The notes beneath the pieces were generated by a model. That model searched no databases. It saw nothing but the letters and a program-made list of their open reading frames with translations, and was not told the origin of the DNA. From the IMG/VR virus record IMGVR_UViG_3300026521_000003, positions 225,881 to 289,880 of that record: 64,000 nucleotides of DNA; one strand, written 5' to 3'. Shown one piece after another: positions 10,888 to 34,527 of the stretch; the first letter of the stretch is position 1; the number at the start of each line of letters is the position of its first letter. A program made the translations under genes and the position numbers.

Positions 10888-11205
10888 ATGAAAAGAAAAT
10901 GTGATATTTGTAATACTGATTATTATGTTAAAAAATCTGATTTAGCTAGAGGATGGGGATTAACATGTAGTAAATCTTGTGCAGCTAAAAAAAGAGAAAG
11001 ATCTAGGAATAACTATGATGAAACAACAGTTAAAATCAATAACCTTAAAAGAAAATTATGGTTTAACAAATATAGAAGTATTGAATTAGAACTCAGAAAG
11101 AAAAATAAAAATATGACCGATATTGAAATTTGGGTTGAAATGTATAAGATTACAAATGATGAGATATTTTTATTTGATGAAATAAAAGATATTTTCATTT
11201 TTTAA
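10888..11205 (+). CDS. Zinc-binding protein with C-terminal DIFIF tag
   Basis: CDIC...RGWGLTCSKSCA; ends LFDEIKDIFIF*. Confidence 0.8.
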   Translation: MKRKCDICNTDYYVKKSDLARGWGLTCSKSCAAKKRERSRNNYDETTVKINNLKRKLWFNKYRSIELELRKKNKNMTDIEIWVEMYKITNDEIFLFDEIKDIFIF

Positions 11206-11211
11206 AGGATA

Positions 11212-11793
11212 TTGATGCATATAATATTAACAGATCATGTAAAAAATAGAAGAAAGAAAGGTAAGATCCCACCGCAAAGATTAATAGACTTTGCAACATA
11301 TCTTATAAAAGAACACGATTTAAAAAATAAAGAAGATGGCCGATATAAGTTCCGTAGGAAATCAACATCAGCGATTATTTCTAAGAAAAAAGAAAAATTC
11401 ACATTTATCACCTTTTTTGGTGGTACAGGATGGTTGATTGATTCTGATGATTTTTCCGGATTTAATTGCAAAAAACAAACGGCTGAACGAGTTAAACTTT
11501 CCATAAAAAGAAGTAAAGAGAAGAATAAAAATAAAATTATAAAAGAGATTAAACCATTACAAAACCTTAATGCTGAAATAAAAGATAAACTGAAAAGAGA
11601 CACTTTCAAAATTGATAAGTTGCGGGGCACTACAAAAGTAATTCTTAAAGCTATGTTTGGTAATAATCCTGAATTTTTATTTTTATCTAAATTCAAATCA
11701 TACAATTTAGTTTCAATTTTAAGAAGAGATGGTGGAATTATAAAAACGATTCACAAAAATAAACTTATAGAAATAGGAGTACTAGATGGATAG
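11212..11793 (+). CDS. Basic hypothetical protein
   Basis: 193 aa Lys/Arg-rich; AAGGA SD; start TTG 11212 or ATG 11215. Confidence 0.75.
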   Translation: MMHIILTDHVKNRRKKGKIPPQRLIDFATYLIKEHDLKNKEDGRYKFRRKSTSAIISKKKEKFTFITFFGGTGWLIDSDDFSGFNCKKQTAERVKLSIKRSKEKNKNKIIKEIKPLQNLNAEIKDKLKRDTFKIDKLRGTTKVILKAMFGNNPEFLFLSKFKSYNLVSILRRDGGIIKTIHKNKLIEIGVLDG

Positions 11794-12295
11794 TAATGGT
11801 TTTATAAAGATGATAGGTAAAATGCAAAATATGTGGCAACCTACATATATAGATGAAGAATATGTCAAGGTTTATAAAGATATTTGGTTTGTTGATTCTA
11901 GTTATCCTTTTGAAATAACCAGAGATTATGAAATGGTTTTAAAAAATGAAGATGAAATTTTATCTCAAATTGGTTTATTACCAAATGCTCAAAAAATGGT
12001 ACAAATGATGATGAATTCAACGTACGGTAGTTACGGAGTACCATCGTCAAGATTATATGGAAACCCTTCTCATTATTATGCTCGAACGATGTCTACCAAT
12101 AATTTTTTTAAAGAGTACAAATATGAAGAAGCAGCTAAAGTAGCACAAAATGAAAAATTGATTGCTCACTATAATCATAAAATTAAAAAAGCACCAAAGA
12201 AGAAAGAACAAGTTGAACGTCTTACAAAAATTATTGAAATGCTCGAACAAGAAAACGAAGATTTTATCACAGAATATCCAGAAAGGTTTATTTAA
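11786..12295 (+). CDS. Hypothetical protein with C-terminal PExxx tag
   Basis: Ends EYPERFI*; internal QKMVQMMMNSTYGSYG. Confidence 0.8.
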   Translation: MDSNGFIKMIGKMQNMWQPTYIDEEYVKVYKDIWFVDSSYPFEITRDYEMVLKNEDEILSQIGLLPNAQKMVQMMMNSTYGSYGVPSSRLYGNPSHYYARTMSTNNFFKEYKYEEAAKVAQNEKLIAHYNHKIKKAPKKKEQVERLTKIIEMLEQENEDFITEYPERFI

Positions 12296-12762
12296 TGAAT
12301 ACATCAACAAATCATGTACATACGATTAATACGATACCACTTTATCAAGCCCAACATCATCTAACACAAAAACACCAAAGTACTGGAAGAATCAAGCGTT
12401 CTTTTAATCTTGGTTCCTCTTTCCAAACCGGATATAAATATCGGGTATTAACACGATTTCCATTTAGTGTTTCTAGACATGAGGAACTTGATGAAGTAAC
12501 AGTTTTTGATTTTTTTGACCGTATTACTTATCATCTTTGTGAAACGAGATTGGAAGCTGAAAAAATAAGATTGGAAGCTTTAGAAGAACATTATGATGAA
12601 CAATATAAAAAATATTTAGCAGATACTTCTAAATTTAAGCGCAAATCGTATAAATTTAATGGGTATGTTTCAGTTGATGGTTTAAAGGCCAAAAGGTTAC
12701 TTAATAGATACAAAACTGAATTGAATAATTTGGAAAAGGATCATCCAGAATGGCTAATTTGA
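12295..12762 (+). CDS. Hypothetical protein with C-terminal PExxx tag
   Basis: Ends DHPEWLI*; TAATG overlap. Confidence 0.8.
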   Translation: MNTSTNHVHTINTIPLYQAQHHLTQKHQSTGRIKRSFNLGSSFQTGYKYRVLTRFPFSVSRHEELDEVTVFDFFDRITYHLCETRLEAEKIRLEALEEHYDEQYKKYLADTSKFKRKSYKFNGYVSVDGLKAKRLLNRYKTELNNLEKDHPEWLI

Positions 12763-13100
12763 ATCATATCTTATTGCCGGAACACCGAGGTAGAACATGG
12801 CTTAATAAATGGTGGAAAACTACTTCTTCCATTAATGAAGAAGCGTTCGATATTATACTTGAGCGAGTTAATATTTTAATAGAACGTTTTGAAATTCCTG
12901 TACAAAATCCATCAATGCTAACCTCTATAATGGATCGAATAATTAGGAACTACAATGCTATTGTTTATGAAGAAAATGGAGAAATTATGATAGTTGATTT
13001 ATTTAATTATCAAACGGAGGATACCTATGCTTTTGGCCTTGGTAACACACCAATATTCAATAAGTATATTTTCGATAATTACCCAGAGTTATTAGTATGA
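12750..13100 (+). CDS. Hypothetical protein with C-terminal PExxx tag
   Basis: Ends NYPELLV*; ATG inside the previous tag (gaa tgg). Confidence 0.8.
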   Translation: MANLNHILLPEHRGRTWLNKWWKTTSSINEEAFDIILERVNILIERFEIPVQNPSMLTSIMDRIIRNYNAIVYEENGEIMIVDLFNYQTEDTYAFGLGNTPIFNKYIFDNYPELLV

Positions 13101-13462
13101 TTGATGTAGAAGATATAAAACCAGGTACAGTTATTGAAATTCCATTAAACTTTAAATCGCATAATTTTAGTAATTTAGTTCCTGGTTCACTAGTACTTAT
13201 TTACTATGTGAATAAATTTTTGTGTTCTGGGATTGATATGAAACGTTCAAAGATGATGGGAATGGATATATCATGGGATGATTTAAAGCAGGGAGTAATT
13301 GTAGATTTTATCCCTGAACCAGAACCACTTTTTTATCATTGGGTTGGAGAAGGAAGAACTACTTCGAGTACTGATGCAGTAGAAATTATTTTAAAAAAAC
13401 AAGAATATCGAAAAAAATTAGGTTTATTAATAGCCGAATTTTATCCAGAATATACTTTATAA
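13097..13462 (+). CDS. Hypothetical protein with C-terminal PExxx tag
   Basis: Ends FYPEYTL*; ATGA overlap. Confidence 0.8.
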   Translation: MIDVEDIKPGTVIEIPLNFKSHNFSNLVPGSLVLIYYVNKFLCSGIDMKRSKMMGMDISWDDLKQGVIVDFIPEPEPLFYHWVGEGRTTSSTDAVEIILKKQEYRKKLGLLIAEFYPEYTL

Positions 13463-13474
13463 TAAGGTTTAAAT

Positions 13475-13933
13475 ATGAGTTTAAATTCACTTAATTCTAA
13501 AATCGTATCTAGTCTAGGAGTCCCACTTTCAAAGATTAGACCTTTGAATACAACAATCACATCAGCACCACCTACGGCATCATCGATGGTGATGGGAGTA
13601 GATGTAGCATCTATGTATCCAAGTAGTACTAGTTCTTATAATTCTGGTGGAAATTTAAATTTTGGCTCTTTAATAGATGTACCATATTTAGTTTCTAAAG
13701 ATTTTCCATTTAAAATAAAAGTTATTTCAAAATCGGATATTAAAACTATTCAAAATAGTTTTAGTGATATGATTGATCTTATGAGTAAGTATGATGGATA
13801 TGGCTCAAGATTAGAAGCTGAGAAACAGCGTATTAAAAAACTTATAGATGCCACCGTAGATATTAGTATAGTAAAAGAATTAGAAAAATCATTAGAAAAC
13901 ATTGAAGTAGATCATCCAGAGTGGCTAATTTAA
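13475..13933 (+). CDS. Hypothetical protein with C-terminal PExxx tag
   Basis: Ends DHPEWLI*; internal VMGVDVASMYPS. Confidence 0.8.
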   Translation: MSLNSLNSKIVSSLGVPLSKIRPLNTTITSAPPTASSMVMGVDVASMYPSSTSSYNSGGNLNFGSLIDVPYLVSKDFPFKIKVISKSDIKTIQNSFSDMIDLMSKYDGYGSRLEAEKQRIKKLIDATVDISIVKELEKSLENIEVDHPEWLI

Positions 13934-14001
13934 ATTAATTCATAAGTGATTTAAAGTATAAATAAGTTAAAATTCACTATTATAGTGTATTAGGAATTTT
14001 A

Positions 14002-14823
14002 ATGATTGATTTAGATTATATTTTTGATGATGTTAAAAATAAGACAATAACAAAAAAAGAAGCGTATGAGTTAGTAAAAAATATTGGTGATAGTATGACA
14101 TTTACTACGTCTAAACATACTAGTACTGATGTGTATGTTGAAATAGCAAAAAAAATCCCTGATGATGATTTGATTGAGACTATGATAAATTCTCAAATAG
14201 AAAATTATCGTAGTAGTCAAGGGATATATAGATTGTTAGATTTAGCTTCAAAAACTTTTTTTGAAAAAAAGTGGGATGAAGCTATCAATCAACCCGGTGG
14301 TTATTATTTAAACTATTATAAGTCAAAGCATACTGATGGAGAAAAACTGTATTATTTATGGACTCATATTTTAAAGAAAAAACCGGCAGCAAAGAATTGG
14401 AAAGAAAAACTTAAACAGGGTATTTTAAGTCATCCTAATTGTCCACCAAAGATTACAAATAGACAATTAAGGAATTTAGATAATATACATATTATAGCTT
14501 TAAATAAAAATTTAGCATCTAATCCAAAGGCTCTAAAAGCTGTAGGTGATTATGCAGCAGTATTTAGACATGATGGTATATTTGAAAATCTTACAAGAAA
14601 CAAATATGTTCCTTGGGAGAAAATTTCAGAAGTTGTTGATATGAAAAATCAAGTAAAAGCCATGATGACACCTTCTGTACCTGTAACGTTTAGAAGAAAA
14701 GCTGCAATATTAGAATTTTTTAGAAGAGAAGATACTCCTGATAAAGCGAGAGAGGTAATGTATAAAATTACTGGTGATGATGAATTTTTACCTAAAGAGG
14801 TACGAGACCTCTTTATTTTTTAA
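14002..14823 (+). CDS. DIFIF-tagged helical-repeat protein
   Basis: Ends MYKITGDDEFLPKEVRDLFIF*; LSHPNCPPKI and LNKNLASNP LRV/HEAT-like segments. Confidence 0.88.
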   Translation: MIDLDYIFDDVKNKTITKKEAYELVKNIGDSMTFTTSKHTSTDVYVEIAKKIPDDDLIETMINSQIENYRSSQGIYRLLDLASKTFFEKKWDEAINQPGGYYLNYYKSKHTDGEKLYYLWTHILKKKPAAKNWKEKLKQGILSHPNCPPKITNRQLRNLDNIHIIALNKNLASNPKALKAVGDYAAVFRHDGIFENLTRNKYVPWEKISEVVDMKNQVKAMMTPSVPVTFRRKAAILEFFRREDTPDKAREVMYKITGDDEFLPKEVRDLFIF

Positions 14824-14832
14824 GGATATATT

Positions 14833-16374
14833 ATGAGAAAAAATGCAATTCAAACTAAAGAAAATATACGAGAATGGGTAAAGAATCATTTAGATTCATT
14901 CCCTTTTAAAATGAGTATTGAAGAATATGATAATTTAACGGATGGATTAAAATCATTAATTGAAAATAAATTGATTTCTATTCATAATAAGCAATACCCT
15001 AATAAAACAAAAGATTCATGGAGACATGACTATAAATTTACTAAAACAGAATTAAATAAACTTAAAATTCCAGACCCGTTTTTACCTCCAAGTAGTTTAA
15101 AACGTATTGAAAGTGGGTTGATTAAAGCTAGACAAATAGCTGAAGATAATAAACCTATTAAGTGGGTTGATATTAATGAACGTTTAAAAAAGAATTTTAA
15201 AAAATGGGTAGATGAATACGCTGAAACATTTGATGAAGACTTTCTTGGAAGATATTTTGATGATTTACCTGAAGATATAAAATTAGAATGGATTACACTA
15301 ATGGGTAAAAAGTTTGGTTTAAAAACTCCAGGAGCATTAAAAAAAGGTTTTATTTCAGCAAAAGATATGATTGACCAAGTCCAACATATGAGAATTCCTA
15401 ATAATATTCATAATGCTATATTAGATGTATTGCCGGAATCAGCATTTTTACAAACTACTAATAAATCTGATATGAAAAACTGGGATGCAAAAGAACAAGT
15501 TGCTTTTACGAAATCATTATCTCAAGAAGAATTAAAAGCAGCACGAGAAAATAGAAAAATTGATAAAAAGCGAGTAAAACTACTAGCTAAAGCTAGAACT
15601 ATTAAAAGTTTAGAATCTTATCAAGAACTTCTTTCAGATCCTCTATTTGATAGAGATATGCTTGAAACGATTATTAAACGTATGGAGCGAAAAACAGCTT
15701 TTGATAATGGTTGGGGAGATCAAAATAAAAAAGAAATTCTGAAATTGATTGTTACTCATCCTTTCTTATCATATGAAGATTTAAAAAGAATAGAAAAAGT
15801 AAAAGCCCCAAATTATTATGCAGGTTCACAAAAAGAGTATGTTTCAAAAGAATTAAATACTGCTCTAGCATCTAAAAAAGATTTACCTGAAAGTGATCTA
15901 ATGAAGATGGTAAAAAAGCAGCAATTCGATATTAAAGTAATTGCATCTAAAAGAGATTTAAAAGAAGAAAATAGAGAAATCTTGATTACATATACTATAA
16001 AGCATCACTCACATATGCCAGCTCAATTAGAAGAAGTATTTTCTAATTTAAAGATTAAAAAAGATAAGTATAAAAAGGAAATTATAGAAGCATTATATTC
16101 AAAATATATAGAGAAAAATTGGTTAGCTAACGGAATCCGATTCTTAGAGGTTGTAGATAAATATAATTGGCTGTCTGAAATTGATGAAGAATTAAAATCA
16201 AAAATAGCAAGATCATTAGTTAAGAACTATAAAGATAATAGGATTAGTCAAGATAGATTAATAAAAATGCTAAACAAAATATCTGCAGGTGCGGATTATT
16301 TAATGAAACTATATGAAGAAACTGGCGATGACGCTTTCTTACCAACTGATGTTAAAGACATTTTTATATTTTAG
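14833..16374 (+). CDS. DIFIF-tagged protein (513 aa)
   Basis: Ends LYEETGDDAFLPTDVKDIFIF*. Confidence 0.9.
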   Translation: MRKNAIQTKENIREWVKNHLDSFPFKMSIEEYDNLTDGLKSLIENKLISIHNKQYPNKTKDSWRHDYKFTKTELNKLKIPDPFLPPSSLKRIESGLIKARQIAEDNKPIKWVDINERLKKNFKKWVDEYAETFDEDFLGRYFDDLPEDIKLEWITLMGKKFGLKTPGALKKGFISAKDMIDQVQHMRIPNNIHNAILDVLPESAFLQTTNKSDMKNWDAKEQVAFTKSLSQEELKAARENRKIDKKRVKLLAKARTIKSLESYQELLSDPLFDRDMLETIIKRMERKTAFDNGWGDQNKKEILKLIVTHPFLSYEDLKRIEKVKAPNYYAGSQKEYVSKELNTALASKKDLPESDLMKMVKKQQFDIKVIASKRDLKEENREILITYTIKHHSHMPAQLEEVFSNLKIKKDKYKKEIIEALYSKYIEKNWLANGIRFLEVVDKYNWLSEIDEELKSKIARSLVKNYKDNRISQDRLIKMLNKISAGADYLMKLYEETGDDAFLPTDVKDIFIF

Positions 16375-16382
16375 GTGATATT

Positions 16383-16856
16383 GTGGAAAATGATTACAAA
16401 ATTTTATTAAATGATATTAAACAAAGTGCTAAGGGTAAAATGGTTTTTAATTCAAAAGAGATTGTGAGTCAAGAAATGTTAAGTCCTCAATTAGCAAGAA
16501 TAGCTATTGATTTAGTTACATCAAGAAGAGGAAATGAAATCTATGAACTTGCTCCAGCTGTAGCCGTAGAGATCAATGACCCAATGGTTAAAGATCATAT
16601 TTTAGATGAAATTCTTAAAAACTATTTAAATAGGCAATCGGCACCAACAGCAATTATTGAATTTCTTATTAAAAATGCTAATAAATTAGACATTGGTCTA
16701 ATGGAAAAAATTTATGATACATCGGATGAAGATTTTAAACTTTTTTTAAGAAATATAGGACAAAAGTTTAGAGAAGATTTTAATATAAAAGTATATAATG
16801 AAACTGGCGACAAATCATATTTGCCAGAAGAAGTAGCAAGTATATTTATTTTTTAA
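16383..16856 (+). CDS. DIFIF-tagged protein
   Basis: GTG start; ends VYNETGDKSYLPEEVASIFIF*. Confidence 0.85.
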   Translation: MENDYKILLNDIKQSAKGKMVFNSKEIVSQEMLSPQLARIAIDLVTSRRGNEIYELAPAVAVEINDPMVKDHILDEILKNYLNRQSAPTAIIEFLIKNANKLDIGLMEKIYDTSDEDFKLFLRNIGQKFREDFNIKVYNETGDKSYLPEEVASIFIF

Positions 16857-16866
16857 AGGATAAAAA

Positions 16867-17751
16867 ATGTTTGAAATAGATGAAATGGTATATAAATTAA
16901 GAAGTATTATTGATTATGATACAGCGATAAAATATTATAACGATGAAATAAAAATAAAGTTAAATCATGACTTTCAATATGCAGAATTATTACGCAAATA
17001 TTTAGATAAAACAACAGCTTTAAAATATTGGCAAATTGGATTTGATATAGTATCTGATATAGATTCTGAATCACTTTGGTCTGATTTTGTATATCTATTA
17101 AATTCTAAATTAGCTTCTAAAAATAAAAATATCCCTTGGTTAGCATCAATGGTAAGTAATCTATCAAAAAAAATTAAAGTTGGGCATAATCTTGAAACAT
17201 TAATTATGTTATTTATTAATGTTAATTTGTTCCGATTTTATATAAAAGAAGTTCATCCAAAGTTAGACCAAGATGATTCCTATTGGGCAATATCTTCAGC
17301 AAGTAAAAATATGAATTTAAATAATATCGATGAATTAGTTGAAATAGCAGATTATAAGCTTTTTGAACGTATTTTAAACAATGATAAGGTAATGCCTGAA
17401 AATAAATTAAGATTATTAGAGTTGTTTTTAAGAAAAACTCAATTTGGTGTTAAAAATTTTAGTAGTCTGGATTTTTTATTTTTGCTTGAAAATCATCGTC
17501 GATGGTTTAATAATGTAAATGTTATGAATTCAACAACAGCAGCATATAGAAATTTATTACCTGATGAAAGTGTTGCAAAATTATTAACTGAAATTATAAT
17601 GGATGGAGATTTTACAGATGAATCTAAATACTTATGGCTATCAAGTATGTATCAATATAAATTAAATGATACAATGGGAGTAGCATTGTATGGATTAACT
17701 CAAGATGTTAAATATCTAACAGATGAAATTAAAGATATATTTGTATTTTAA
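16867..17751 (+). CDS. DIFIF-tagged protein
   Basis: Ends LYGLTQDVKYLTDEIKDIFVF*. Confidence 0.88.
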   Translation: MFEIDEMVYKLRSIIDYDTAIKYYNDEIKIKLNHDFQYAELLRKYLDKTTALKYWQIGFDIVSDIDSESLWSDFVYLLNSKLASKNKNIPWLASMVSNLSKKIKVGHNLETLIMLFINVNLFRFYIKEVHPKLDQDDSYWAISSASKNMNLNNIDELVEIADYKLFERILNNDKVMPENKLRLLELFLRKTQFGVKNFSSLDFLFLLENHRRWFNNVNVMNSTTAAYRNLLPDESVAKLLTEIIMDGDFTDESKYLWLSSMYQYKLNDTMGVALYGLTQDVKYLTDEIKDIFVF

Positions 17752-17762
17752 GGATGTAAATT

Positions 17763-18278
17763 ATGAGATATAAAATAAGTAGTAAATTATTGTCGGATAT
17801 TGTATCTAGTTATCAAGAGAGTATGAGATTGAGTGTTGGTCCAGAAATTAAATTTGTAGATGCAGAAATTGAACATCTTACATGGGATGTACTTTTAGAA
17901 GAACCTATTTTTCTAATTAATTATTATGGCTTTGATGAAGATATTTATGATTCTGATGGGTTTTTCTTTTGTCGGGATATTATTGGTTTTTCGATGGATG
18001 ATGAAAGTGAAAATGAATTAGAACGTAGATTTGGTGTAGATAATGAAAAAGTTGAAAAACTATTTATTGAACTTTTTAAAGAATTTATATCAAATAATAG
18101 TTTACCAACTATGGACATTATAGAAGAAATTTATTATTACAATTATAATTTAATTAAGATAATGAATGATATTGAATTTTTTAATAAGTTAGAAAATGAA
18201 GAAAAAGAGTACCTTTATAAAGTTACGAATGATACTTTATTTTTACCAAAAGACGTAACTGATATATTTGTATTTTAA
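17763..18278 (+). CDS. DIFIF-tagged acidic protein
   Basis: Ends LYKVTNDTLFLPKDVTDIFVF*. Confidence 0.85.
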   Translation: MRYKISSKLLSDIVSSYQESMRLSVGPEIKFVDAEIEHLTWDVLLEEPIFLINYYGFDEDIYDSDGFFFCRDIIGFSMDDESENELERRFGVDNEKVEKLFIELFKEFISNNSLPTMDIIEEIYYYNYNLIKIMNDIEFFNKLENEEKEYLYKVTNDTLFLPKDVTDIFVF

Positions 18279-18292
18279 TAAGAGGCTTAAAA

Positions 18293-19108
18293 ATGACTAG
18301 AAGAAAACCAAGAAGTTTGCGAGGTAGAGTAGCAAAGAGAGGATTTAGAGAATTATCATATGATGATAAATTAGATTATATAAATAATTCACATCAAGCA
18401 GTAAGTGAATTTAGATCATATCCTGAAGATTTTTATAATTTTCTTGATAAGATTGATTGGCATAATGTAGATTTTTGTAAAGCTTTACGGAGACCAAAGG
18501 AATTAAAACTTCTTTTAGATCAAAAACTTTTAGACCAAAAGGCTATCGATATAATATTTTTAAATACTCATTTCTTCCCTATCTTTAAAAATCTAATTAA
18601 ATTAACTAGTGAATCTAATAGTGTTATTACTAAACGTATGCTGGAATTTTTAAAGCGAGATTTTGAAAGTCAAGAACCAAAGCATAAGTTATTTAAAAAA
18701 TTAGATAAAGAGGGAATAATAGATTGGGATGTTTTGAATATGCATAGTTATTTCCAAAGTTATATGAGTTATATTTTTGGAAACTATGAGTCTTATACAG
18801 ATTTCGCCAATTATTTGCTAGATTCGGATAAAATTAGTTTAAATGGTGAAACTGAACGTAGTATTTGGCATACGTTTGATATTGATTTAATGATTAAATT
18901 ATTAAAAAAAGATAGAAAAATAGCAACTACCCCAAATGTCTTTTTAGATAATGGGAATATTGATGAATTTTTTGATAAATGGCCTAAAGATAAAGTACAG
19001 GAATTTATAAAACTAGTTAATGATAGACCGGAACTTCAAAACTGTATTATTGAAAATGCATACATATCATTATTACCAGAAGAAGTAGCAAATATATTTG
19101 TTTTTTAA
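18293..19108 (+). CDS. DIFIF-tagged protein
   Basis: Ends ISLLPEEVANIFVF*. Confidence 0.88.
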   Translation: MTRRKPRSLRGRVAKRGFRELSYDDKLDYINNSHQAVSEFRSYPEDFYNFLDKIDWHNVDFCKALRRPKELKLLLDQKLLDQKAIDIIFLNTHFFPIFKNLIKLTSESNSVITKRMLEFLKRDFESQEPKHKLFKKLDKEGIIDWDVLNMHSYFQSYMSYIFGNYESYTDFANYLLDSDKISLNGETERSIWHTFDIDLMIKLLKKDRKIATTPNVFLDNGNIDEFFDKWPKDKVQEFIKLVNDRPELQNCIIENAYISLLPEEVANIFVF

Positions 19109-19118
19109 AGGATAAAAA

Positions 19119-19757
19119 ATGTTTAAATGGGATAATTCAAAAGATTATGATGCAAATGTATTTGATTATATAGTCTATTCTGATCCAGAGAAATTGGTAC
19201 AAACTTTTTATAAAGATTTATCTCTAAGAGTTGAGTTTGAAACATCGGATCCAAATAGACATATGCCAATGGTTATTAGTACTAATTCAATAATTGAAAC
19301 TTTATTGCAAGAATTTCATGATGTTTTCACAGAACAAGAATTAATAAAGATGGTTAAATTATTATTTAAATTAGATTATGAAGATAAGTATTTTATTATC
19401 CGTACTTTAAATAGAAATTTTTTGCATAATGAACTAACTATTGATAATTATATGCTTTGTCGTATTATTGAAAAAGTAACACCTAGTAAAAATATATTTA
19501 CATCTGATATTGTTGATTTGATGCATAGGAGTAAGCAATTTATTATACCTTATTTAACAGCATTTAAATATCGATTGTCCAATCATGATAAACATTTTCT
19601 TTATACTGAATTTACTGAAGATTTTTCTGGTATGTTTGATAAAAAAATAACATACTGGATTATGGATAATATTGATGGTATTAGTAAAATGGTTATAGAT
19701 TCTGGAGAAGAACTCATTTATATACCAAAAGAAGTTAGAGAAATTTTTATTTTTTAA
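19119..19757 (+). CDS. DIFIF-tagged protein
   Basis: Ends LIYIPKEVREIFIF*. Confidence 0.85.
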   Translation: MFKWDNSKDYDANVFDYIVYSDPEKLVQTFYKDLSLRVEFETSDPNRHMPMVISTNSIIETLLQEFHDVFTEQELIKMVKLLFKLDYEDKYFIIRTLNRNFLHNELTIDNYMLCRIIEKVTPSKNIFTSDIVDLMHRSKQFIIPYLTAFKYRLSNHDKHFLYTEFTEDFSGMFDKKITYWIMDNIDGISKMVIDSGEELIYIPKEVREIFIF

Positions 19758-19805
19758 GAGAAATTAAGGATATATTTAATATAATTAAAAATAAGAGGAA
19801 TTAAA

Positions 19806-20513
19806 ATGAGAACGGAAATAGAAATACTTGCAGAAATTGAATCAGGTAAGATTACAATAACTGATGCATTAGAAGAAGTTCATGAAACCGGTGCATACTT
19901 ACTAATACAAAAAATTGCTAATATGGAATTGACTAAATCCGAAAGATTATTATTAATATCTCTTATACCACAAGTAGATGATGTCTTGAGTCTTAAAAAT
20001 TTCTTTTTAACTTTAAAAAGTCATGATGAAATAAAATTATTTTTAGAAGAATGTAATAAATCAAATATTAGTACAAGTATATATTATGCTCTTATGATAC
20101 GGAATGATATAGATAAAAAAATCTACTTTCGTCCTATAATTGATGCCCTTGCGGGAAGAAGCCAAGAATTTGTGGGGTTGATAAAGAAACTGATAAAAAA
20201 AATAGATAATATTTTATTATCTGATATTGAATATCTTTATAAAAATGCTGCAAGAAGGGATTTTGCTAATATTATCAACGAACATATATCAATTTTTTCA
20301 GAGGATATCATCAAGTACATTTTTGGAATTGTAAAGGATATGGAAGATAAAAATCCTCCAGTTTCAAGACTATTACTTCATGCTTTAGATGTTCAAATTA
20401 TGGACAATCCAAGAAAATATAGTTTTGAAGATGAATTTAAAATGTATATGTATGAATTTACTGGAAATGATGAATACTTGCCAGACGATATAAAAACGAT
20501 TTTTATATATTAA
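19806..20513 (+). CDS. DIFIF-tagged protein
   Basis: Ends MYEFTGNDEYLPDDIKTIFIY*. Confidence 0.85.
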   Translation: MRTEIEILAEIESGKITITDALEEVHETGAYLLIQKIANMELTKSERLLLISLIPQVDDVLSLKNFFLTLKSHDEIKLFLEECNKSNISTSIYYALMIRNDIDKKIYFRPIIDALAGRSQEFVGLIKKLIKKIDNILLSDIEYLYKNAARRDFANIINEHISIFSEDIIKYIFGIVKDMEDKNPPVSRLLLHALDVQIMDNPRKYSFEDEFKMYMYEFTGNDEYLPDDIKTIFIY

Positions 20514-20523
20514 AGGGGGTTTA

Positions 20524-21195
20524 GTGTTATCTAATAATAAAATTAAATTTTATAATGAAAACATACGTAAACCCCTAGAACTTCTTGGTTTTAACTCTAT
20601 TCCAAGAGGTGAAACTTACAATGAATTTTCTAAAGGTCGTAATTATAAATATAATGCGTTGATGCATATTTCTGTTCAAGTAGATTTTGAAAAATTATTA
20701 TTTAAATATCGTCTTAGCTTTCCGTGGTATAGTAATTTTTCAACTATTCCAATTGCATATAAAATACTACTTTTACCTAAAAGAGAAATAGTTGTAGAAT
20801 TATCAAAAGAGAATTATCAACAAGAATTAGAAAATATTTTTTCCGAAATTGTGGACCAATTAGAAAAAAATAAAAAAGAATTTGATATTATGATTCGAGA
20901 AAAATTAAATGAAGTAGATGAAAATAGTATAGCTAAATTATTTACACCTATCAATACACCAATACTACTAAATTATTTAGATTTAGAATATACAGATTAT
21001 ATCAAAATTATTTTTAGTTTAAGAAAAAGATTAAAGAATTATACTGAAAAAATAACTATTCTTTTTATGCATAACATGTCTAAAAAGGGATTGAGACTTT
21101 CAACTTCTGATTTAGAATTATTAGAAACTATTGAGTATAATAGTTCTATAAAATTTTCTCAACTTGAGGAACTTAAATCTATTTTTATATATTAA
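20524..21195 (+). CDS. DIFIF-tagged protein
   Basis: GTG start; ends QLEELKSIFIY*. Confidence 0.85.
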   Translation: MLSNNKIKFYNENIRKPLELLGFNSIPRGETYNEFSKGRNYKYNALMHISVQVDFEKLLFKYRLSFPWYSNFSTIPIAYKILLLPKREIVVELSKENYQQELENIFSEIVDQLEKNKKEFDIMIREKLNEVDENSIAKLFTPINTPILLNYLDLEYTDYIKIIFSLRKRLKNYTEKITILFMHNMSKKGLRLSTSDLELLETIEYNSSIKFSQLEELKSIFIY

Positions 21196-21204
21196 AGGTA
21201 CATT

Positions 21205-22713
21205 ATGATACTAAAATCAATGAAAGTTTATGATAAAAAATGTTTATTAGAAAATGATCAGTTAGAATCCAGTATTGTAGATAAACTGGCTAATGATAGA
21301 TCAATCACTATTCGATATTGGGCTGTTTCTCATAAAAATATTAGTAGTCAGAGTTTATCTAGAGCATTGTTATCAAAAAAGAATTTTGATAGAGAACAGA
21401 TTTTATCTTCAATTTTATATAATAAAAAATTAGATTTTGAAACAAGATTAACATTCGTAGAAAAATATCTTCATAATATTGAAGTAGTACTAGATTTTTA
21501 TGATATAGTTTATAATACCTCTTTAGAGGAACGAAATCAAATAATAGAAATCTTTGTTAATCGATTATTATTAAAGCAGACTTTAAAATATGAATATTTT
21601 AAATATATTCCAAGTTATATAAATTTAGCGTTAGATGAATATTCTAAGATTTATGAAATATTTTTAAAGCGTGCACCATCAATTTTGTTAGTTACGCAAA
21701 ATGGTTTTGAAAGGGACAATCAAACATTTTCTAAAACTCAAATTAAGCAAATTTTTAAAGCTGTCGTGGATAATAATAAAAATTATGGATGTTTAGTATA
21801 TGATTTAGGACCTACATATTTAAAATCAATCCCATCACATTTTTTAAATTATGTGATAAAGACAAAAAATATAACAAAAAAAGAAATTGAACTTTTTTTA
21901 ATGAATGAAAATTTTAACGAAAAAATGATAATGAAAATCATTAATACTGTTGATTATGATGTACTACTAGAAATTGCTAGATCATCTATTTTAACAGAAG
22001 ATATTGAACAACGGATTTATAATAAAATAAAAACTCATGATATTGACAGTACTTTGTTCTATGCATTATTATCGAATCCAACTCATAATTTTGAAAGGTC
22101 ATATGATTTTATGGTAATGCATCATACTTATTTTACGATATCTTCAATTATGAAGTCTATTATAAGTTCAAATTACCCTGTTACATTAATTGATAAAGTC
22201 ATTAATGAAATCAAAATAGTGCATCCTTTAACAGCACTAGGTTTATATATAGTAGAAAATAATACATCAGAAATATATTTAAATAAAATTTGGGATAAGT
22301 ATTGGGATGGTCAAATCATTAGTTATACACCCAGATATAGAGCTTATAATAGGTTTGATAATAGTATAAAAGATACTTCATATATTATTCAGTTGATGAT
22401 TACAGAATCATCACTAAGTTATAAATTTGCGTATAAATATTATAAAGAGACTAATGAAGTTAGATATTGTAGGAATATATCGGAGTATAATTCTGATGAA
22501 ATAGATAGTATATGGTCAAGTGTTAGAGACACTAATATTTTTGAATATTCTAAGAGTTATTATAATGATGCATATTATATTGAAGATGTAAAAGTTGCGT
22601 TATTAGAATATGCAAAAGAGAATAATTTATCAAAATATATAGTTGATGAATATCAGATGTTTAATAATACAAAATATATTGCTAAGGAAGCATTAGACTT
22701 ATTTGAATTTTAG
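21205..22713 (+). CDS. DIFIF-tagged LRV/HEAT-like repeat protein (502 aa)
   Basis: LANDRSITIRYWAVSHKNIS repeat-like start; ends NTKYIAKEALDLFEF*. Confidence 0.88.
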   Translation: MILKSMKVYDKKCLLENDQLESSIVDKLANDRSITIRYWAVSHKNISSQSLSRALLSKKNFDREQILSSILYNKKLDFETRLTFVEKYLHNIEVVLDFYDIVYNTSLEERNQIIEIFVNRLLLKQTLKYEYFKYIPSYINLALDEYSKIYEIFLKRAPSILLVTQNGFERDNQTFSKTQIKQIFKAVVDNNKNYGCLVYDLGPTYLKSIPSHFLNYVIKTKNITKKEIELFLMNENFNEKMIMKIINTVDYDVLLEIARSSILTEDIEQRIYNKIKTHDIDSTLFYALLSNPTHNFERSYDFMVMHHTYFTISSIMKSIISSNYPVTLIDKVINEIKIVHPLTALGLYIVENNTSEIYLNKIWDKYWDGQIISYTPRYRAYNRFDNSIKDTSYIIQLMITESSLSYKFAYKYYKETNEVRYCRNISEYNSDEIDSIWSSVRDTNIFEYSKSYYNDAYYIEDVKVALLEYAKENNLSKYIVDEYQMFNNTKYIAKEALDLFEF

Positions 22714-22723
22714 TGAGGATTAA

Positions 22724-23116
22724 ATGAAACTACATGAATTAAATGAAAAGGTTAAAATTGTTAATAAAAGTGATTTAGATATGTTTAGCAATTGGGATGC
22801 TAGATTTTGGATTGATATGGACGATTATATAGACACAGTAAAAAAAGAAGGTGTAGAAACGGCAATTACACTTGTATCAAAAACAATCAAGAAAATAGGT
22901 GAAGAAAATTATATCACCTTAAAAAATCTTGCAGATAAAGAGAAATTTGGTGTACCAGAGTTTAATAAAGCGATAGATACCAAACATTTAAAAAGTATTG
23001 ATGCTTCAAAAATAGTCATTCTTATGGATTTAGTTGATCGACGTGCTAAGATACGTAAAAGTAAATTGGAATCTGAACTTAAAAAGATTCAAAAACAAAT
23101 TGATATGCTGGGGTAA
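22724..23116 (+). CDS. Putative head-associated protein with leader MKLHELNE
   Basis: Untagged gene inside the array; CTS-like N-terminus. Confidence 0.75.
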   Translation: MKLHELNEKVKIVNKSDLDMFSNWDARFWIDMDDYIDTVKKEGVETAITLVSKTIKKIGEENYITLKNLADKEKFGVPEFNKAIDTKHLKSIDASKIVILMDLVDRRAKIRKSKLESELKKIQKQIDMLG

Positions 23117-23119
23117 AAA

Positions 23120-23311
23120 ATGAAAATAAAAGATTTAAATGAAATGTTTTTAAGTGGTAATCTAGACGCTGCTCTGGATTGGGATGAAACTCCTTCAGAT
23201 GTTAAGGATATGGATGGTAATCCAAGTAAATTACCTATTCAAATACCTAAAAAATTTAAAGTAAAATATAAGAAAAAACGAAACAAAAAAAATGACACAA
23301 AAGCAGTATGA
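23120..23311 (+). CDS. Small protein with leader MKIKDLNE
   Basis: 63 aa; CTS-like N-terminus, basic C-terminus. Confidence 0.7.
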   Translation: MKIKDLNEMFLSGNLDAALDWDETPSDVKDMDGNPSKLPIQIPKKFKVKYKKKRNKKNDTKAV

Positions 23312-23960
23312 TCGAATAGTTGAACGTTCTAAAAGTTCAAGGTATTCTACAAGACAAAAAGTAGCAAAAGATCCGGATACACCTATTGAAATTGTAAACA
23401 ATTTAATTCTTGATGATGATTCTAGAGTTTCATTAGTTGCCGCATTAAATGGTAACATTGATGAGAGTACATTAGGACTTCTTTTAGAATCATACGATAT
23501 ATCTTCAAATATTTTTATTGAGATATATAAAAATAGAAATTTTAAAGAAAAATGGATCCCAAATTTTATCCGTATTTTGAAATCGCATAATATTTCTCCA
23601 ATGTTTATAATTTATTCTAATCGCTTTTTACAAAATATGGATGATTGGTTGAAAACTTTTGATGAAGTAATTAAAGTTCAAGAGGAAGTTGGTAGTTTAA
23701 TTACTGTTTCTATCTCAAATAAATTTTTTGTTGTATTTGTAAGAAAAGTAGGATATAATAAAAACATTTTTAAGTCTAAGGCTATATTAAAGATTTTAGA
23801 TACGTTCGGCGAATTATTTCATAATGTTTCTGGTGGTATATTTAGTGCTATATTAGAAAATATTGATGATGATGATCAGGAAGTAAGAAAAAAGATTTAT
23901 GAAATTACTAATGATTCAAAATACTTACCACAAATATTACAAGATGTATTTATATTCTAG
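23292..23960 (+). CDS. DIFIF-tagged LRV/HEAT-like protein
   Basis: RQKVAKDPDTPIEIVNNLILDDDSRVSLVAALNGNI repeat; ends IYEITNDSKYLPQILQDVFIF*. Confidence 0.88.
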   Translation: MTQKQYDRIVERSKSSRYSTRQKVAKDPDTPIEIVNNLILDDDSRVSLVAALNGNIDESTLGLLLESYDISSNIFIEIYKNRNFKEKWIPNFIRILKSHNISPMFIIYSNRFLQNMDDWLKTFDEVIKVQEEVGSLITVSISNKFFVVFVRKVGYNKNIFKSKAILKILDTFGELFHNVSGGIFSAILENIDDDDQEVRKKIYEITNDSKYLPQILQDVFIF

Positions 23961-23969
23961 GAATTAATT

Positions 23970-24536
23970 ATGAAAATAAATCAAAAAGCAAAACAAAAAG
24001 AGAGAACGAGACTATTAAAATACATTAAAGATGATAATATTGATAGTGTAAAAGAGTTTTTATTGACCTATACTTATGATGACTTCGATAAGTTATTTAG
24101 GTATGCTTGTGAGAATGGTGAGAACGTTATAAAATATTTATTAGGTGAATTTGATGATTTTTATTCATCAGAAATTGATTCTGGATTAGTATTTTTAGTA
24201 CAAAAATTTCCAAAATTATTTTTAGAAATTCACAAAAAGTTCATAAATCAAAAAGGTTATAAAGATGCAGAAATAAGATTTATGAGAATTGCTGCTAGAT
24301 TTGGAAAAGAAGATTTATTCACTTATTTTATTAATGAACGAGGTATTGATCCGGCTCAACCAAAAAATGAATTATTATATAGTTTAATTAGAAAAACAAA
24401 AATATCTGCTTCAGGTAATAATATTCAAAGAATGATAGAAATACTTAAAAATGACCCTAGAGTTATAGAAGAAGCGGCAAAATGTAACCAAACTGATTTA
24501 TTGCCCGATGACATCAAAGATATGTTTGTATTTTAG
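23970..24536 (+). CDS. DIFIF-tagged ankyrin-like protein
   Basis: LFRYACENG..VIKYLL and MRIAARFGKEDLFTYFINERGID; ends TDLLPDDIKDMFVF*. Confidence 0.82.
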   Translation: MKINQKAKQKERTRLLKYIKDDNIDSVKEFLLTYTYDDFDKLFRYACENGENVIKYLLGEFDDFYSSEIDSGLVFLVQKFPKLFLEIHKKFINQKGYKDAEIRFMRIAARFGKEDLFTYFINERGIDPAQPKNELLYSLIRKTKISASGNNIQRMIEILKNDPRVIEEAAKCNQTDLLPDDIKDMFVF

Positions 24537-24545
24537 GGGATTTTT

Positions 24546-25571
24546 ATGAAGATTTATGATGAATTAATTTATGATGATATTAGTATTTATTTAACCTATG
24601 AGCCTTATGAACATATATATCGTCGTGCTAGAAAAAGATTAAAACAATATTTTTCTGAAGAAATGTCAGCTGAATATTTTAATGAATTAATATATGCAGA
24701 TTATATTGAAGTTCAATCAGATAAAAAAATATCTGAAGCTAAACTTAATAATTTTAAATCATTTATGATTGCTTATTTCTTTGATAATAAAAATATGACG
24801 TCTAAAACTTATTATAAATCATTTGAATATATAAAGACTATGGAAGATCCATTAGAACGATTTGATGATCTTTTAACTAGTTCATTTTGTACAGATGAAG
24901 TTTTCTTATATTGTTTAGATAATGAATATATGGGTAATGATGAAGCTACACCTAGAAACATTCCATATAATAACTTTAAAGATAAAACGATAACAGAATT
25001 TTTAAAAGCAATAGATTGGTCGTGGTTTCATAAAGCTCCGCAATACGTAACAGCTTTATTAGATCAAAGAAAATTGACACAAATTCAATATGAATTGATA
25101 TTTAATCAATTTAGTGACTATACAGATATAGTATTTCTTATTGTAGAAAAAGGTGGACGTATTCCCGATGATAAATTTATTGAGTTACTGGGTAAGTATG
25201 ATACATTTGATATTAGTTATGCTAAAGTTGGAAAGGCTATTAAAGCTAAAATTTTAGAAAATTATGATTTTATAAGAAAGTCAGAATACCTTTCAGTTAT
25301 CATGGACTTTTTAACTATGGATGCAAAAGATTTTGAAAGAGCTCAAATTTATGATGCAATATTGCGCTATAAGCTTTCTAATAATTATCTTCATAGTGAA
25401 TTTCAAAGCGACCTTATAAGACGTATAGCTTTTGATACAAATGCTATAGATATTTTAGCAGAGAAAGCAGATTTTTCTAAATATGAACCATCAACACTTA
25501 TGCTAATTTATGAACTAAATAAAAATGAATTTTTCTTACCATCAGAAATTAAAGAAATTTTTATATTTTAA
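24546..25571 (+). CDS. DIFIF-tagged protein
   Basis: Ends IYELNKNEFFLPSEIKEIFIF*. Confidence 0.88.
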   Translation: MKIYDELIYDDISIYLTYEPYEHIYRRARKRLKQYFSEEMSAEYFNELIYADYIEVQSDKKISEAKLNNFKSFMIAYFFDNKNMTSKTYYKSFEYIKTMEDPLERFDDLLTSSFCTDEVFLYCLDNEYMGNDEATPRNIPYNNFKDKTITEFLKAIDWSWFHKAPQYVTALLDQRKLTQIQYELIFNQFSDYTDIVFLIVEKGGRIPDDKFIELLGKYDTFDISYAKVGKAIKAKILENYDFIRKSEYLSVIMDFLTMDAKDFERAQIYDAILRYKLSNNYLHSEFQSDLIRRIAFDTNAIDILAEKADFSKYEPSTLMLIYELNKNEFFLPSEIKEIFIF

Positions 25572-25572
25572 A

Positions 25573-25580
25573 AATAAATA
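25573..25580 (+). promoter_or_regulatory. T4-type late promoter (AATAAATA)
   Basis: AATAAATAAAGGAAAAATAGGATTTTAT-ATG(25601). Confidence 0.55.
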
Positions 25581-25600
25581 AAGGAAAAATAGGATTTTAT

Positions 25601-26386: not shown

Positions 26387-26397
26387 GGATTACGGAT

Positions 26398-27198: not shown

Positions 27199-27232
27199 TT
27201 TAAATTAAAGCTCAAAAAGGTATAATAATAAT

Positions 27233-28192: not shown

Positions 28193-28205
28193 TTGAAGGA
28201 ATAAA

Positions 28206-28814: not shown

Positions 28815-28817
28815 ATA
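28810..28817 (+). promoter_or_regulatory. T4-type late promoter (TATAAATA)
   Basis: AGTATAAATAAAAGAAAACAGGATTTATTTC-ATG(28839). Confidence 0.62.
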
Positions 28818-28838
28818 AAAGAAAACAGGATTTATTTC

Positions 28839-29291: not shown

Positions 29292-29302
29292 GAGAGAGTA
29301 GA

Positions 29303-30787: not shown

Positions 30788-30796
30788 GAGAATTTT

Positions 30797-31429: not shown

Positions 31430-31438
31430 GAGATACTT

Positions 31439-32121: not shown

Positions 32122-32149
32122 TTAACTTTCCTAAAAACATATTGAAATG

Positions 32150-32157
32150 TATAAATA
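32150..32157 (+). promoter_or_regulatory. T4-type late promoter (TATAAATA)
   Basis: Upstream of 32186 (MKLKYLLE leader). Confidence 0.55.
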
Positions 32158-32185
32158 CTAATATAATTATACAAAAGGTTTTATT

Positions 32186-32548: not shown

Positions 32549-32559
32549 AGGTTAAAAAG

Positions 32560-32910: not shown

Positions 32911-32920
32911 AGGATGAAAT

Positions 32921-33925: not shown

Positions 33926-33936
33926 GAGAAAATAAT

Positions 33937-34479: not shown

Positions 34480-34527
34480 ATCTAAATTAAGAGATTCTAG
34501 GTTATAATTTTAAAAAGAGGATATATT

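What the first reader, a model, noticed from the sequence alone, without database searches (positions are those of the whole stretch)
16821..19124. Near-identical 52-bp junction cassette (tag + stop + SD + next start) between unrelated genes
Seen: 16821-16872 and 19073-19124 match at 49 of 52 nt (ttRccagaagaagtagcaaRtatatttRttttttaaaggataaaaaatgttt). The match spans the tag, stop, AAGGA SD, ATG and the next codon, while the flanking genes are dissimilar. Inference: tag-coding junctions act as homology islands for recombination, so a new gene can be dropped in and gain both a tag and a translation start. This would explain the expansion of the array.
Basis: partly seen in the sequence, partly recalled or inferred. 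Interest (0 to 1): 0.6.

Follow-up and report, generated by a model that had tools for sequence, protein, structure and literature searches.

The report
Gene-conversion patch between phage tag genes
Two gene boundaries in a giant hydrothermal-vent phage share an almost identical 59-base stretch because one boundary was recently overwritten by the other; this happens because more than forty otherwise unrelated neighbouring genes all end in the same short protein tail, and exchanges at these tails also add, remove and reorder whole genes.

Summary
Window 16821-16872 and 19073-19124 match at 49 of 52, and in register at 54 of 59 over 16814-16872. Flanking identity is 38-39%. It is the strongest direct repeat in the window and an outlier among 820 junction pairs (mean 29 of 52, next best 40).

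The window is the end of a 289,880-bp metagenomic jumbo phage. Forty-three of its ORFs (11% of the genome) end in one C-terminal motif, Leu-Pro-x-Glu-Val-Lys-Asp-Ile-Phe-Ile-Phe. Their bodies are unrelated or are repeat proteins (ankyrin, HEAT/LRV, LRR).

An 86%-identical relative has the same genes at both junctions, but the junctions there are unlike (32 of 52). The pair is therefore a short gene-conversion tract specific to this lineage, not an insertion scar.

Recombination at tails is real. There is a one-gene indel with breakpoints in the last tail codons, and a divergent segment that ends at a tail. Distant relatives show whole-gene shuffling. Near-identical tails between unrelated genes recur in at least two other lineages. 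One lineage has shifted its whole tail consensus.

The tail is conserved as a peptide and is modelled as exposed. Its partner is unknown. A phage-encoded ClpS-ClpA-ClpP set is only a lead. The claim that new genes gain a tag this way is not shown.

The parts
16814..16872 (+). Copy 1 (junction J1), the likely recipient of the conversion. It holds the last codons of gene 16383-16856, the stop, the Shine-Dalgarno, and the start plus one codon of gene 16867-17751.
   Evidence: 54 of 59 to copy 2. Its 36-nt tail is only 24 of 36 to its own orthologue in the relative, but 31 of 36 to copy 2. See also alignment A3.
19066..19124 (+). Copy 2 (junction J2), the likely donor. It holds the end of gene 18293-19108, the stop, the Shine-Dalgarno, and the start of gene 19119-19757.
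   Evidence: Its tail is 31 of 36 to its orthologue in the relative, so it is stable in both lineages.
16383..16856 (+). 157-aa tail-bearing gene upstream of copy 1.
   Evidence: ORF list. The body is 87% identical to the relative's orthologue while the tail is discordant. It shares only the tail with gene 18293-19108.
16867..17751 (+). 294-aa tail-bearing gene downstream of copy 1.
   Evidence: 23% identity over 150 aa to gene 19119-19757. A 33%-identical orthologue sits elsewhere in the array in contig L018.
18293..19108 (+). 271-aa tail-bearing gene upstream of copy 2.
19119..19757 (+). 212-aa tail-bearing gene downstream of copy 2.
10888..47920 (+). Main array: 39 of the window's 41 plus-strand ORFs that end in the shared C-terminal motif. 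Most are separated by 6-14 nt holding only a Shine-Dalgarno.
   Evidence: The 4-residue end pattern is expected at 0.34 of 574 ORF ends and is seen at 43.
55209..57685 (.). Three outlying members: 55209-55769 (+), 56004-56681 (+), and 56678-57685 (-), which is convergent with the second.
43749..44450 (+). 233-aa tail-bearing gene, present here and absent from the relative. The indel is one exact gene unit with breakpoints in the tails.
   Evidence: It is also absent from the order in contig L091.
44412..44450 (+). Tail of gene 43749-44450. It is 36 of 39 identical (26 bases exact) to the tail of gene 26398-27198 at 27160-27198.
14759..14824 (+). Tail of gene 14002-14823. In the relative, the orthologue of this tail is 51 of 56 identical to the tail of the relative's 157-aa gene.
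37321..37383 (+). Tail of gene 36811-37383. It is closer to the tail of gene 23292-23960 (35 of 36 to that gene's orthologue) than to its own orthologue (32 of 36).
41458..41940 (+). Segment of gene 41254-41979 that is only 50-70% identical to the relative. Identity returns to 85-97% about 40 nt before the stop, where the tail begins.

Best explanation
The two copies are the product of a short, non-reciprocal recombination event (a gene-conversion tract of about 50-60 bp). The junction between genes 18293-19108 and 19119-19757 served as template. It overwrote the junction between genes 16383-16856 and 16867-17751 in this phage lineage. Repair of a break by copying from an ectopic template is the likeliest route; that step is inferred.

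The event was possible because 43 genes of this jumbo phage end in the same C-terminal peptide, Leu-Pro-x-Glu-Val-Lys-Asp-Ile-Phe-Ile-Phe. In many members it is preceded by Tyr-x-x-Thr-x-Asp. The peptide is conserved at the protein level. With AT-rich codon usage and a similar Shine-Dalgarno spacer, this scatters islands of imperfect DNA homology at every gene end.

Exchanges between these islands have three outcomes, all shown by comparison:
- tails are overwritten;
- whole genes are occasionally deleted, inserted or reordered as units that keep tail, stop, ribosome site and start intact;
- tail variants spread through an array, so that a lineage can change its whole tail consensus.

The tail itself most likely works as an exposed C-terminal docking or degradation peptide. 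It would link very different binder bodies (ankyrin, HEAT/LRV, LRR and other helical proteins) to one shared partner. This is inferred. The partner is unknown, and the phage's own ClpS-ClpA-ClpP set is my first candidate.
For: The conversion:
- 49 of 52 (54 of 59) identity with flanks at 38-39%.
- Outlier among 820 junction pairs and the top direct repeat in the window.
- The relative (86% identical, colinear) has the same genes at both junctions, but its junctions match at only 32 of 52.
- The window's copy-1 tail is 24 of 36 to its orthologue. Most of the other orthologous tails score 29-35 of 36, and one other (gene 17763-18278) scores 25.
- Copy 2 resembles its orthologue.

The process recurs:
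- In the relative, the 157-aa gene's tail is 51 of 56 to another gene's tail.
- In L028, two paralogues that are 44% identical share 60 of 63 nt at the tail.
- In L091, three unrelated genes share an identical 33-nt tail, and two junctions match at 47 of 52 with identical post-stop bases.

Whole-gene flux at tails:
- The 708-bp one-gene indel.
- A mosaic boundary at a tail.
- Shuffled orders and single-gene gains and losses in L018, L019, L033 and L091.

Peptide-level selection: synonymous codons in the tail follow genome usage, and replacements are conservative.

Concerted change: in L033 the tails end Asp-Met/Leu-Phe-Leu-Phe. Leu at position -2 occurs in 12 of 15 tails there against 4 of 41 here (Fisher p about 1e-6).

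Exposed tail: in the AlphaFold2 model of the 37394-38182 family (mean pLDDT 88), the last 11 residues fall to pLDDT 72 and then 43, after a confident final helix.

Binder bodies: ankyrin in 6 of 41; HEAT/LRV-like fold for 26398-27198; LRR-like repeats, read by eye, in P0023.

Clp set.
Against: - No closer outgroup exists for the 157-aa gene: only three clusters were found. The direction (copy 2 to copy 1) rests on copy 2 being stable in both lineages.
- A double crossover with an unseen co-infecting relative cannot be told apart from intragenomic conversion.
- Three mismatches remain within the tract.
- No RecA-family recombinase was detected, and the contig is about 87% complete.
- The public runs are held only as contigs. 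They show no hybrid junction or 2,252-bp deletion, so ongoing exchange is not observed directly.
- Tail function: there is no direct evidence for any partner. The Clp link is co-residence in one genome only. ClpA is also annotated in other jumbo phages, and the one array protein I searched there had no relative.
Confidence: 0.8

Rival explanations
1. The junction is a landing pad, new genes are dropped in between tails, and they thereby gain a tag and a translation start. This would be the main driver of array expansion, and the pair would mark such an insertion.
For: A one-gene indel has its breakpoints in tails. That gene is absent from two other lineages, which by parsimony hints at a gain. 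Whole-gene shuffling is seen among relatives. The PeSL model in T4-type phages gives a precedent.
Against: The three genes between the two copies are all present in the same order in the relative, whose junctions are unlike. So this pair is not an insertion scar. An exchange between tails needs a tail on the incoming gene, so it does not tag new genes. The only expansion seen directly is a tandem triplication. Most gene families are old, with 23-55% identical orthologues in distant contigs.
Confidence: 0.25
2. The pair is a remnant of a recent segmental duplication whose flanks have since diverged or been replaced.
For: The two downstream genes show weak similarity (23% over 150 aa), and both start Met-Phe.
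Against: Identity falls to background within a few bases on both sides. The upstream genes are unrelated outside the tail. The relative has both downstream genes with unlike junctions. Any duplication therefore long predates the near-identity.
Confidence: 0.03
3. Independent convergence under selection on the nucleotide sequence, for example an optimal ribosome site with a terminator-like or coupling signal in the tail.
For: A very similar post-stop spacer appears at two junctions in an unrelated lineage. One tail contains a terminator-like hairpin.
Against: Synonymous sites inside the tract are identical too, while across the array they vary with genome codon usage. Post-stop spacers are only 36% alike on average. 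Tails are kept on genes with no coupled downstream gene, such as the convergent pair at 56004-57685 and the array end at 47920. The orthologous junctions differ.
Confidence: 0.03
4. Assembly or consensus artefact, such as a collapsed repeat or a chimeric contig.
For: Logan contigs break at the repeats, which shows that assemblers do struggle there.
Against: Both copies are exact and correctly spaced in two independent assemblies, and bridging contigs from other studies carry them without differences.
Confidence: 0.01
5. Site-specific recombination sites or mobile-element ends (integron-like cassettes, target-site duplication).
For: The arrangement is a direct repeat flanking a 2.2-kb, three-gene segment. 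A TnpB-like element is present elsewhere in the array.
Against: The repeat is coding and variable across 41 junctions. No RNA family reached threshold in the window, and I saw no integrase ORF beside the pair. The relative carries the same segment without the repeat.
Confidence: 0.02

Closest known systems
PeSL-mediated modular shuffling in T4-type phages (Arbiol et al. 2010, PMC2839356; Comeau et al. 2014, PMC4122927)
   Same: Short conserved sequences repeated at gene boundaries of a variable region in large T4-related phages. A gene flanked by two copies in one phage corresponds to a single chimeric copy in a close relative. The moved unit carries its own expression signals.
   Different: PeSLs are non-coding units of about 100 bp, made of an early promoter and a terminator stem-loop. 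Here the homology is the coding sequence of a C-terminal peptide plus a 6-14 nt ribosome-site spacer. No promoter or stem-loop is needed. Mini-circles were not looked for with raw reads.
Concerted evolution and gene conversion among paralogues with a conserved 3' end, for example trypanosome VSG switching that uses conserved 3' sequences (from general knowledge)
   Same: Conserved C-terminal-coding ends give the downstream homology for copying between otherwise dissimilar genes. Tracts are short and non-reciprocal.
   Different: No silent archive and no expression site. There is no evidence that the exchange is programmed or selected.
Poxvirus ankyrin-repeat proteins with a C-terminal PRANC / F-box-like domain; bacterial adaptors with a C-terminal tethering peptide such as SspB; the ssrA degron (from general knowledge)
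   Same: The architecture: many variable binder domains, each followed by one constant C-terminal element that would connect them to a shared machine.
   Different: The element here is 11-21 residues, not a folded F-box. No Pfam family covers it. The partner and any link to proteolysis are untested.
Clamp-binding C-terminal peptides of T4/RB69-type replication and late-transcription proteins (from memory, not verified here)
   Same: An acidic residue followed by alternating hydrophobic and Phe residues at the very C-terminus. The phage has a T4-type clamp loader and an RB69-like polymerase thumb.
   Different: The phage's own polymerase fragment ends in a different peptide. No clamp gene was found. 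Forty-three repeat proteins on a clamp has no precedent.

Membership tests
Gene-conversion tract between paralogous sequences | A patch of near-identity bounded on both sides by background divergence. | tested here: met
   54 of 59 inside, 39% and 38% outside.
Gene-conversion tract between paralogous sequences | Phylogenetic discordance: the patch is closer to a paralogue in the same genome than to its orthologue. | tested here: met
   24 of 36 to the orthologue against 31 of 36 to the paralogue. The relative's two junctions match at 32 of 52.
Gene-conversion tract between paralogous sequences | Direction and non-reciprocity shown with an outgroup. | tested here: inconclusive
   Only one diverged lineage carries this gene. 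The direction is inferred from the stability of copy 2.
PeSL regulatory cassettes of T4-type phages | An intergenic unit with a sigma-70-like early promoter and a terminator stem-loop. | tested here: not met
   Junction spacers are mostly 6-14 nt. Promoter-like sites are no more frequent than in shuffles, and there are only 6 terminator-like sites in 20 kb.
PeSL regulatory cassettes of T4-type phages | Indels between close relatives are flanked by two copies in one genome and one chimeric copy in the other. | tested here: met
   Gene 43749-44450. This shows the same mechanism, not membership.
PeSL regulatory cassettes of T4-type phages | Excised mini-circles. | not testable with these tools
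   Only contigs of the runs are held.
Integron-type gene cassettes | An attC-like imperfect inverted repeat at each cassette end and an integrase. | not tested
   No dedicated scan for attC-type inverted repeats or for an integrase was run. Indirectly, the repeat lies in coding sequence and no Rfam family reached threshold.
Ankyrin/PRANC (F-box-like) proteins | A C-terminal F-box-like domain detectable by Pfam. | tested here: not met
   The Pfam scan of all 41 members found ankyrin repeats in 6 and no family on the tail.
C-terminal short linear docking or degron motif | At the extreme C-terminus, conserved as a peptide, on unrelated bodies. | tested here: met
   In the profile search, 28 of 29 hits lie at the very C-terminus of diverse proteins.
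C-terminal short linear docking or degron motif | Exposed and flexible in the folded protein. | tested here: met
   One confident AlphaFold2 model, with the tail's pLDDT falling to 72 and then 43. A second model was too poor to use.
C-terminal short linear docking or degron motif | A defined binding partner or protease. | tested here: inconclusive
   The complex prediction with the ClpA N-domain gave no verdict.

The most novel reading that the evidence does not exclude
The array is a phage-encoded arsenal of more than forty adaptor or effector proteins. Their variable repeat bodies would bind different host targets. Their common exposed C-terminal tail would plug them into one machine, possibly the phage's own ClpS-ClpA-ClpP protease. 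The tail co-evolves with that receptor lineage by lineage. Conversion between tail-coding ends would be both the means that keeps all tails matched to the receptor and the engine that shuffles the arsenal. A second, independent tag family (Tyr-Pro-Glu-Leu-Trp-Ile/Val) in the same genome would mark a second such hub.
Probability: 0.2. Interest if true: 0.85.

Novelty: new variant of a known kind. Interest (0 to 1): 0.62.

Why it matters
Phage variable regions are known to shuffle at short conserved boundary sequences, but the known case is a non-coding promoter-terminator cassette. Here the recombining sequence is the coding region of a shared protein tail. A functional constraint on a peptide therefore creates the homology that moves, deletes and homogenises the genes carrying it.

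This gives a concrete, datable example of concerted evolution in a virus. There is one fresh tract, several others in sister lineages, and one lineage-wide change of the tail.

It also points to a large uncharacterised protein system: 11% of a 290-kb genome, with no relatives among cultured phages for the one member tested. Its organising principle, many binders with one tail, can be tested directly with a peptide.

Tried and rejected
Relatives:
- Megablast and tblastn against cultured phages found nothing for the array.
- IMG/VR scans with one array protein and with a tail alignment found nothing.
- A scan of 185,579 species genomes with the tail pattern gave 101 pattern matches, none confirmed. 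The first attempt failed because the alignment had no conserved stretch.
- The genome search on the relative's record failed because the record is not held.

Reads: only contigs of the runs are kept. The joints listed had short sides and none links the two copies, so this says nothing about rare variants.

Tail function:
- The Pfam clamp families, SSB and RecA were all negative in this 87%-complete contig.
- The ESM Atlas search with the tail alone gave no usable hit.
- Foldseek of the good model against the PDB gave no match at E <= 0.001.
- The first AlphaFold2 model, of an ankyrin member, was too poor to use (pLDDT 60).
- The complex prediction of the ClpA N-domain with a tail gave no verdict (score 0.01). 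It is not evidence either way.
- Literature searches for the motif and for tagged paralogue arrays found nothing relevant.
- My recollection of the RB69 polymerase C-terminal peptide could not be verified.

Other:
- The promoter scan is uninformative in this AT-rich DNA: 159 sites against 153 in shuffles. One call over the size limit was corrected.
- Read laying was given 5,001 letters.
- The large profile search was used once. The word search and the family scans had left the tail unexplained.
Full report
WHAT THE WINDOW IS

The window is the last 64 kb of a single 289,880-bp virus record (27% G+C, CheckV completeness 87%). The sequencing runs that hold it come from hydrothermal-vent and epibiont metagenomes.

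The genome has the parts of a large T4-related phage:
- a clamp loader;
- an RB69-like family-B polymerase, split into pieces;
- an NAD-dependent ligase;
- a hef-like endonuclease shared with RaK2-type jumbo phages.

All three stop codons follow the conserved tail, so the standard code applies.

THE OBSERVATION

Positions 16821-16872 and 19073-19124 agree at 49 of 52. In the same register the match runs over 16814-16872 at 54 of 59. On either side it drops to 39% and 38%.

The stretch covers the last codons of the upstream gene, TAA, AAGGA, ATG and one further codon.

I compared all 41 junctions of this kind in the window over the same 52 positions. The 820 pairs have a mean of 29.2 (sd 3.8), and the second-best pair scores 40. 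The 16 bases after the stop are all identical in this pair, against a mean of 5.7. A self-comparison ranks this pair as the strongest direct repeat in the window.

The two upstream genes share nothing but the tail. The two downstream genes align at 23% over 150 residues. They may be ancient paralogues, but they are not recent duplicates.

Both copies are found letter for letter and correctly spaced in two other assemblies; two shorter contigs hold copy 1 only. Contigs from other studies bridge each copy.

THE SETTING: A TAGGED GENE ARRAY

Forty-three ORFs of the genome (33 kb, 11%) end in one motif: Leu-Pro-x-Glu-Val-Lys-Asp-Ile-Phe-Ile-Phe. It is often preceded by Tyr-x-x-Thr-x-Asp. Forty-one of them lie on the plus strand of the window, and one more lies on its minus strand. 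The four-residue end pattern would be expected at 0.34 ORF ends by chance.

With the last 24 residues removed, the proteins show no BLASTP similarity to each other, apart from two marginal pairs.

The bodies are varied:
- Pfam finds ankyrin repeats in six.
- One body has a HEAT/LRV-like fold in the ESM Atlas.
- A metagenomic member, P0023, shows LRR-like repeats by eye.
- A well-modelled member is an all-helical protein with no close structural relative.

The tail is conserved as a peptide. Synonymous codons for Phe, Ile, Asp, Pro and Val inside the tail follow genome-wide usage, and replacements are conservative.

At the DNA level, typical tail pairs are about 64% identical over 33 nt, with a median longest exact run of 8 bases.

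A profile of the 30 C-terminal residues was searched against 1.84 billion representative proteins. It found 29 hits at E <= 0.001, and 28 of them lie at the very C-terminus of diverse proteins.

No relative was found in cultured phages for the one array protein tested, nor in IMG/VR or 185,579 species genomes for the tail pattern.

WHAT THE PAIR IS

A relative, JGI contig Ga0256837_1000041, is colinear with window 6830-48261 at about 86% identity. It has the same five genes in the same order around both junctions, but its two junctions match at only 32 of 52.

Most orthologous tails of the 36 compared agree at 29-35 of 36. The tail of the 157-aa gene (copy 1) agrees at only 24 of 36 with its orthologue, and at 31 of 36 with copy 2. 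One other tail, that of gene 17763-18278, is also discordant at 25 of 36. Copy 2 resembles its own orthologue.

Copy 1 was therefore overwritten from copy 2 in the window's lineage. The tract is about 50-60 bp and ends right after the shared Met-Phe start of the downstream genes.

The relative's version of the same tail is itself 51 of 56 identical to the tail of another gene, the orthologue of 14002-14823. This gene end has thus been a recipient, or was one earlier, in the other lineage too.

RECOMBINATION AT TAILS MORE GENERALLY

(a) Gene 43749-44450 is absent from the relative. The difference is exactly one gene unit of 708 bp. The relative's sequence follows the left tail up to the last codons and the right junction after the stop. 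This is the same picture as the PeSL example in T4-type phages. The gene is also missing from the corresponding place in a fourth lineage, which hints at a gain here. Its tail shares 36 of 39 bases (26 exact) with the tail of gene 26398-27198.

(b) In gene 41254-41979, a segment that is 50-70% identical to the relative ends about 40 nt before the stop, where the tail starts.

(c) More distant contigs (L018, L019, L033, L091) carry orthologues at 23-55% identity, but in other orders. They differ by whole-gene moves and clean single-gene gains and losses.

(d) Near-identical tails on diverged or unrelated genes recur:
- In L028, two tandem paralogues that are 44% identical share 60 of 63 nt at the tail.
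- In L091, three unrelated genes share an identical 33-nt tail, and two junctions match at 47 of 52 with the same 16 post-stop bases.

(e) In L033 the tails of orthologous genes end Asp-Met/Leu-Phe-Leu-Phe instead of Asp-Ile-Phe-Ile/Val-Phe. Leu at -2 occurs in 12 of 15 tails there against 4 of 41 here (p about 1e-6). In L091 the middle of the motif has its own consensus.

Such array-wide shifts are what conversion between tails would produce. They are also what co-evolution with one receptor would require.

WHAT IS NOT SHOWN

- The pair is not an insertion footprint.
- Nothing shows an untagged gene acquiring a tail by this route.
- No read-level variant was seen, because only contigs of the runs are held.
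- The direction of the tract lacks an outgroup.

THE TAIL'S FUNCTION

The AlphaFold2 model of the 37394-38182 family has mean pLDDT 88. It places the Tyr-x-x-Thr-x-Asp part in the last confident helix. The final 11 residues fall to pLDDT 72 and then 43. That fits an exposed C-terminal peptide.

Tails are kept on genes without a coupled downstream gene, which argues against a purely translational role.

The phage encodes clpS, next to a ClpA-type unfoldase with a Val-Gly-Phe loop, and a full-length ClpP elsewhere in the genome. This makes a docking or degradation role attractive, but the support is co-residence only. ClpA also occurs in other jumbo phages. The one complex prediction gave no verdict.

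A clamp-binding role is less likely, because the polymerase fragment ends in a different peptide and no clamp gene was found. A capsid-targeting role cannot be tested here.

VERDICT

The stretch is a fresh, short gene-conversion tract between two members of a large family of tail-sharing genes.

The specific ideas, that this pair marks a drop-in and that new genes gain tags this way, are not.

The mechanism is a variant of the boundary-sequence shuffling known from T4-type phages, with a coding tag in place of a regulatory cassette. The tagged array itself is the more novel object, and its partner remains to be found.

Noticed in passing
window 2785-13933 and 60200-60670 (genome-wide 22 ORFs): A second family of mostly small ORFs ends in another C-terminal motif, Tyr-Pro-Glu-Leu-Trp-Ile/Val. 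In 5 of the 15 window cases the listed start of the next ORF (ATG, or TTG in one case) overlaps the tag's Trp codon, so the genes overlap by 10-13 nt.
   Followed up: partly
window 39830-41221 (ORF 39911-41101, minus strand): A 1.4-kb insertion absent from the 86%-identical relative. It carries a 396-aa ORF that looks like TnpB (zinc-finger and RuvC-like end), with GC-rich, structured-looking flanks, and sits inside the tail-gene array. No Rfam family reached threshold.
   Followed up: partly
genome 159554-162132 and about 61081-61716 (outside the window; loci L123, L031, L029): The phage encodes ClpS, a 767-aa ClpA-type unfoldase with a Val-Gly-Phe loop, and a full-length ClpP (210 bits). A second weak ClpP-like gene lies at genome 18285-19112. 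The ClpA is 27-30% identical to Helicobacteraceae ClpA over its N-terminal region, which hints at a Campylobacterota host.
   Followed up: partly
genome 4449-5252, 24475-25428 and 25479-26633 (loci L005, L006): The RB69-like family-B DNA polymerase is split into separate ORFs that lie far apart. A tail-bearing gene with no family match sits directly upstream of the C-terminal (thumb) piece.
   Followed up: partly
window 63902-64000: The contig ends in a perfect 12-nt tandem repeat of 8.2 copies, which probably stopped the assembly.
   Followed up: no
window 49958-52093: A 711-aa ORF is 35% identical to the hef-type putative homing endonucleases of RaK2-like jumbo phages. It contains a 29-nt exact internal repeat at 50249-50277 and 50456-50484.
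   Followed up: no
window 14793-14815: A 9-bp perfect hairpin followed by a T-run, which looks like a terminator, lies inside the tail codons of gene 14002-14823. It is weaker in the relative, so it may be chance.
   Followed up: no
window 10837-10857 and 48784-48804: An identical 21-nt T-rich stretch occurs just upstream of the first tail gene and upstream of gene 48843-49283. It could be a shared leader or promoter element.
   Followed up: no
window 28698-29066: The N-terminal part of ankyrin gene 28839-29291 (150 aa) is not alignable with the relative's 220-aa version, while the C-terminal 75 residues are. The body has changed upstream of a kept tail.
   Followed up: partly
locus L027 (2.3-kb contig) and genome 33590-33964: A tail-bearing protein with LRR-like repeats lies next to an OmpR-type response regulator on a small contig. 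The phage genome itself holds a CheY-like receiver ORF.
   Followed up: no
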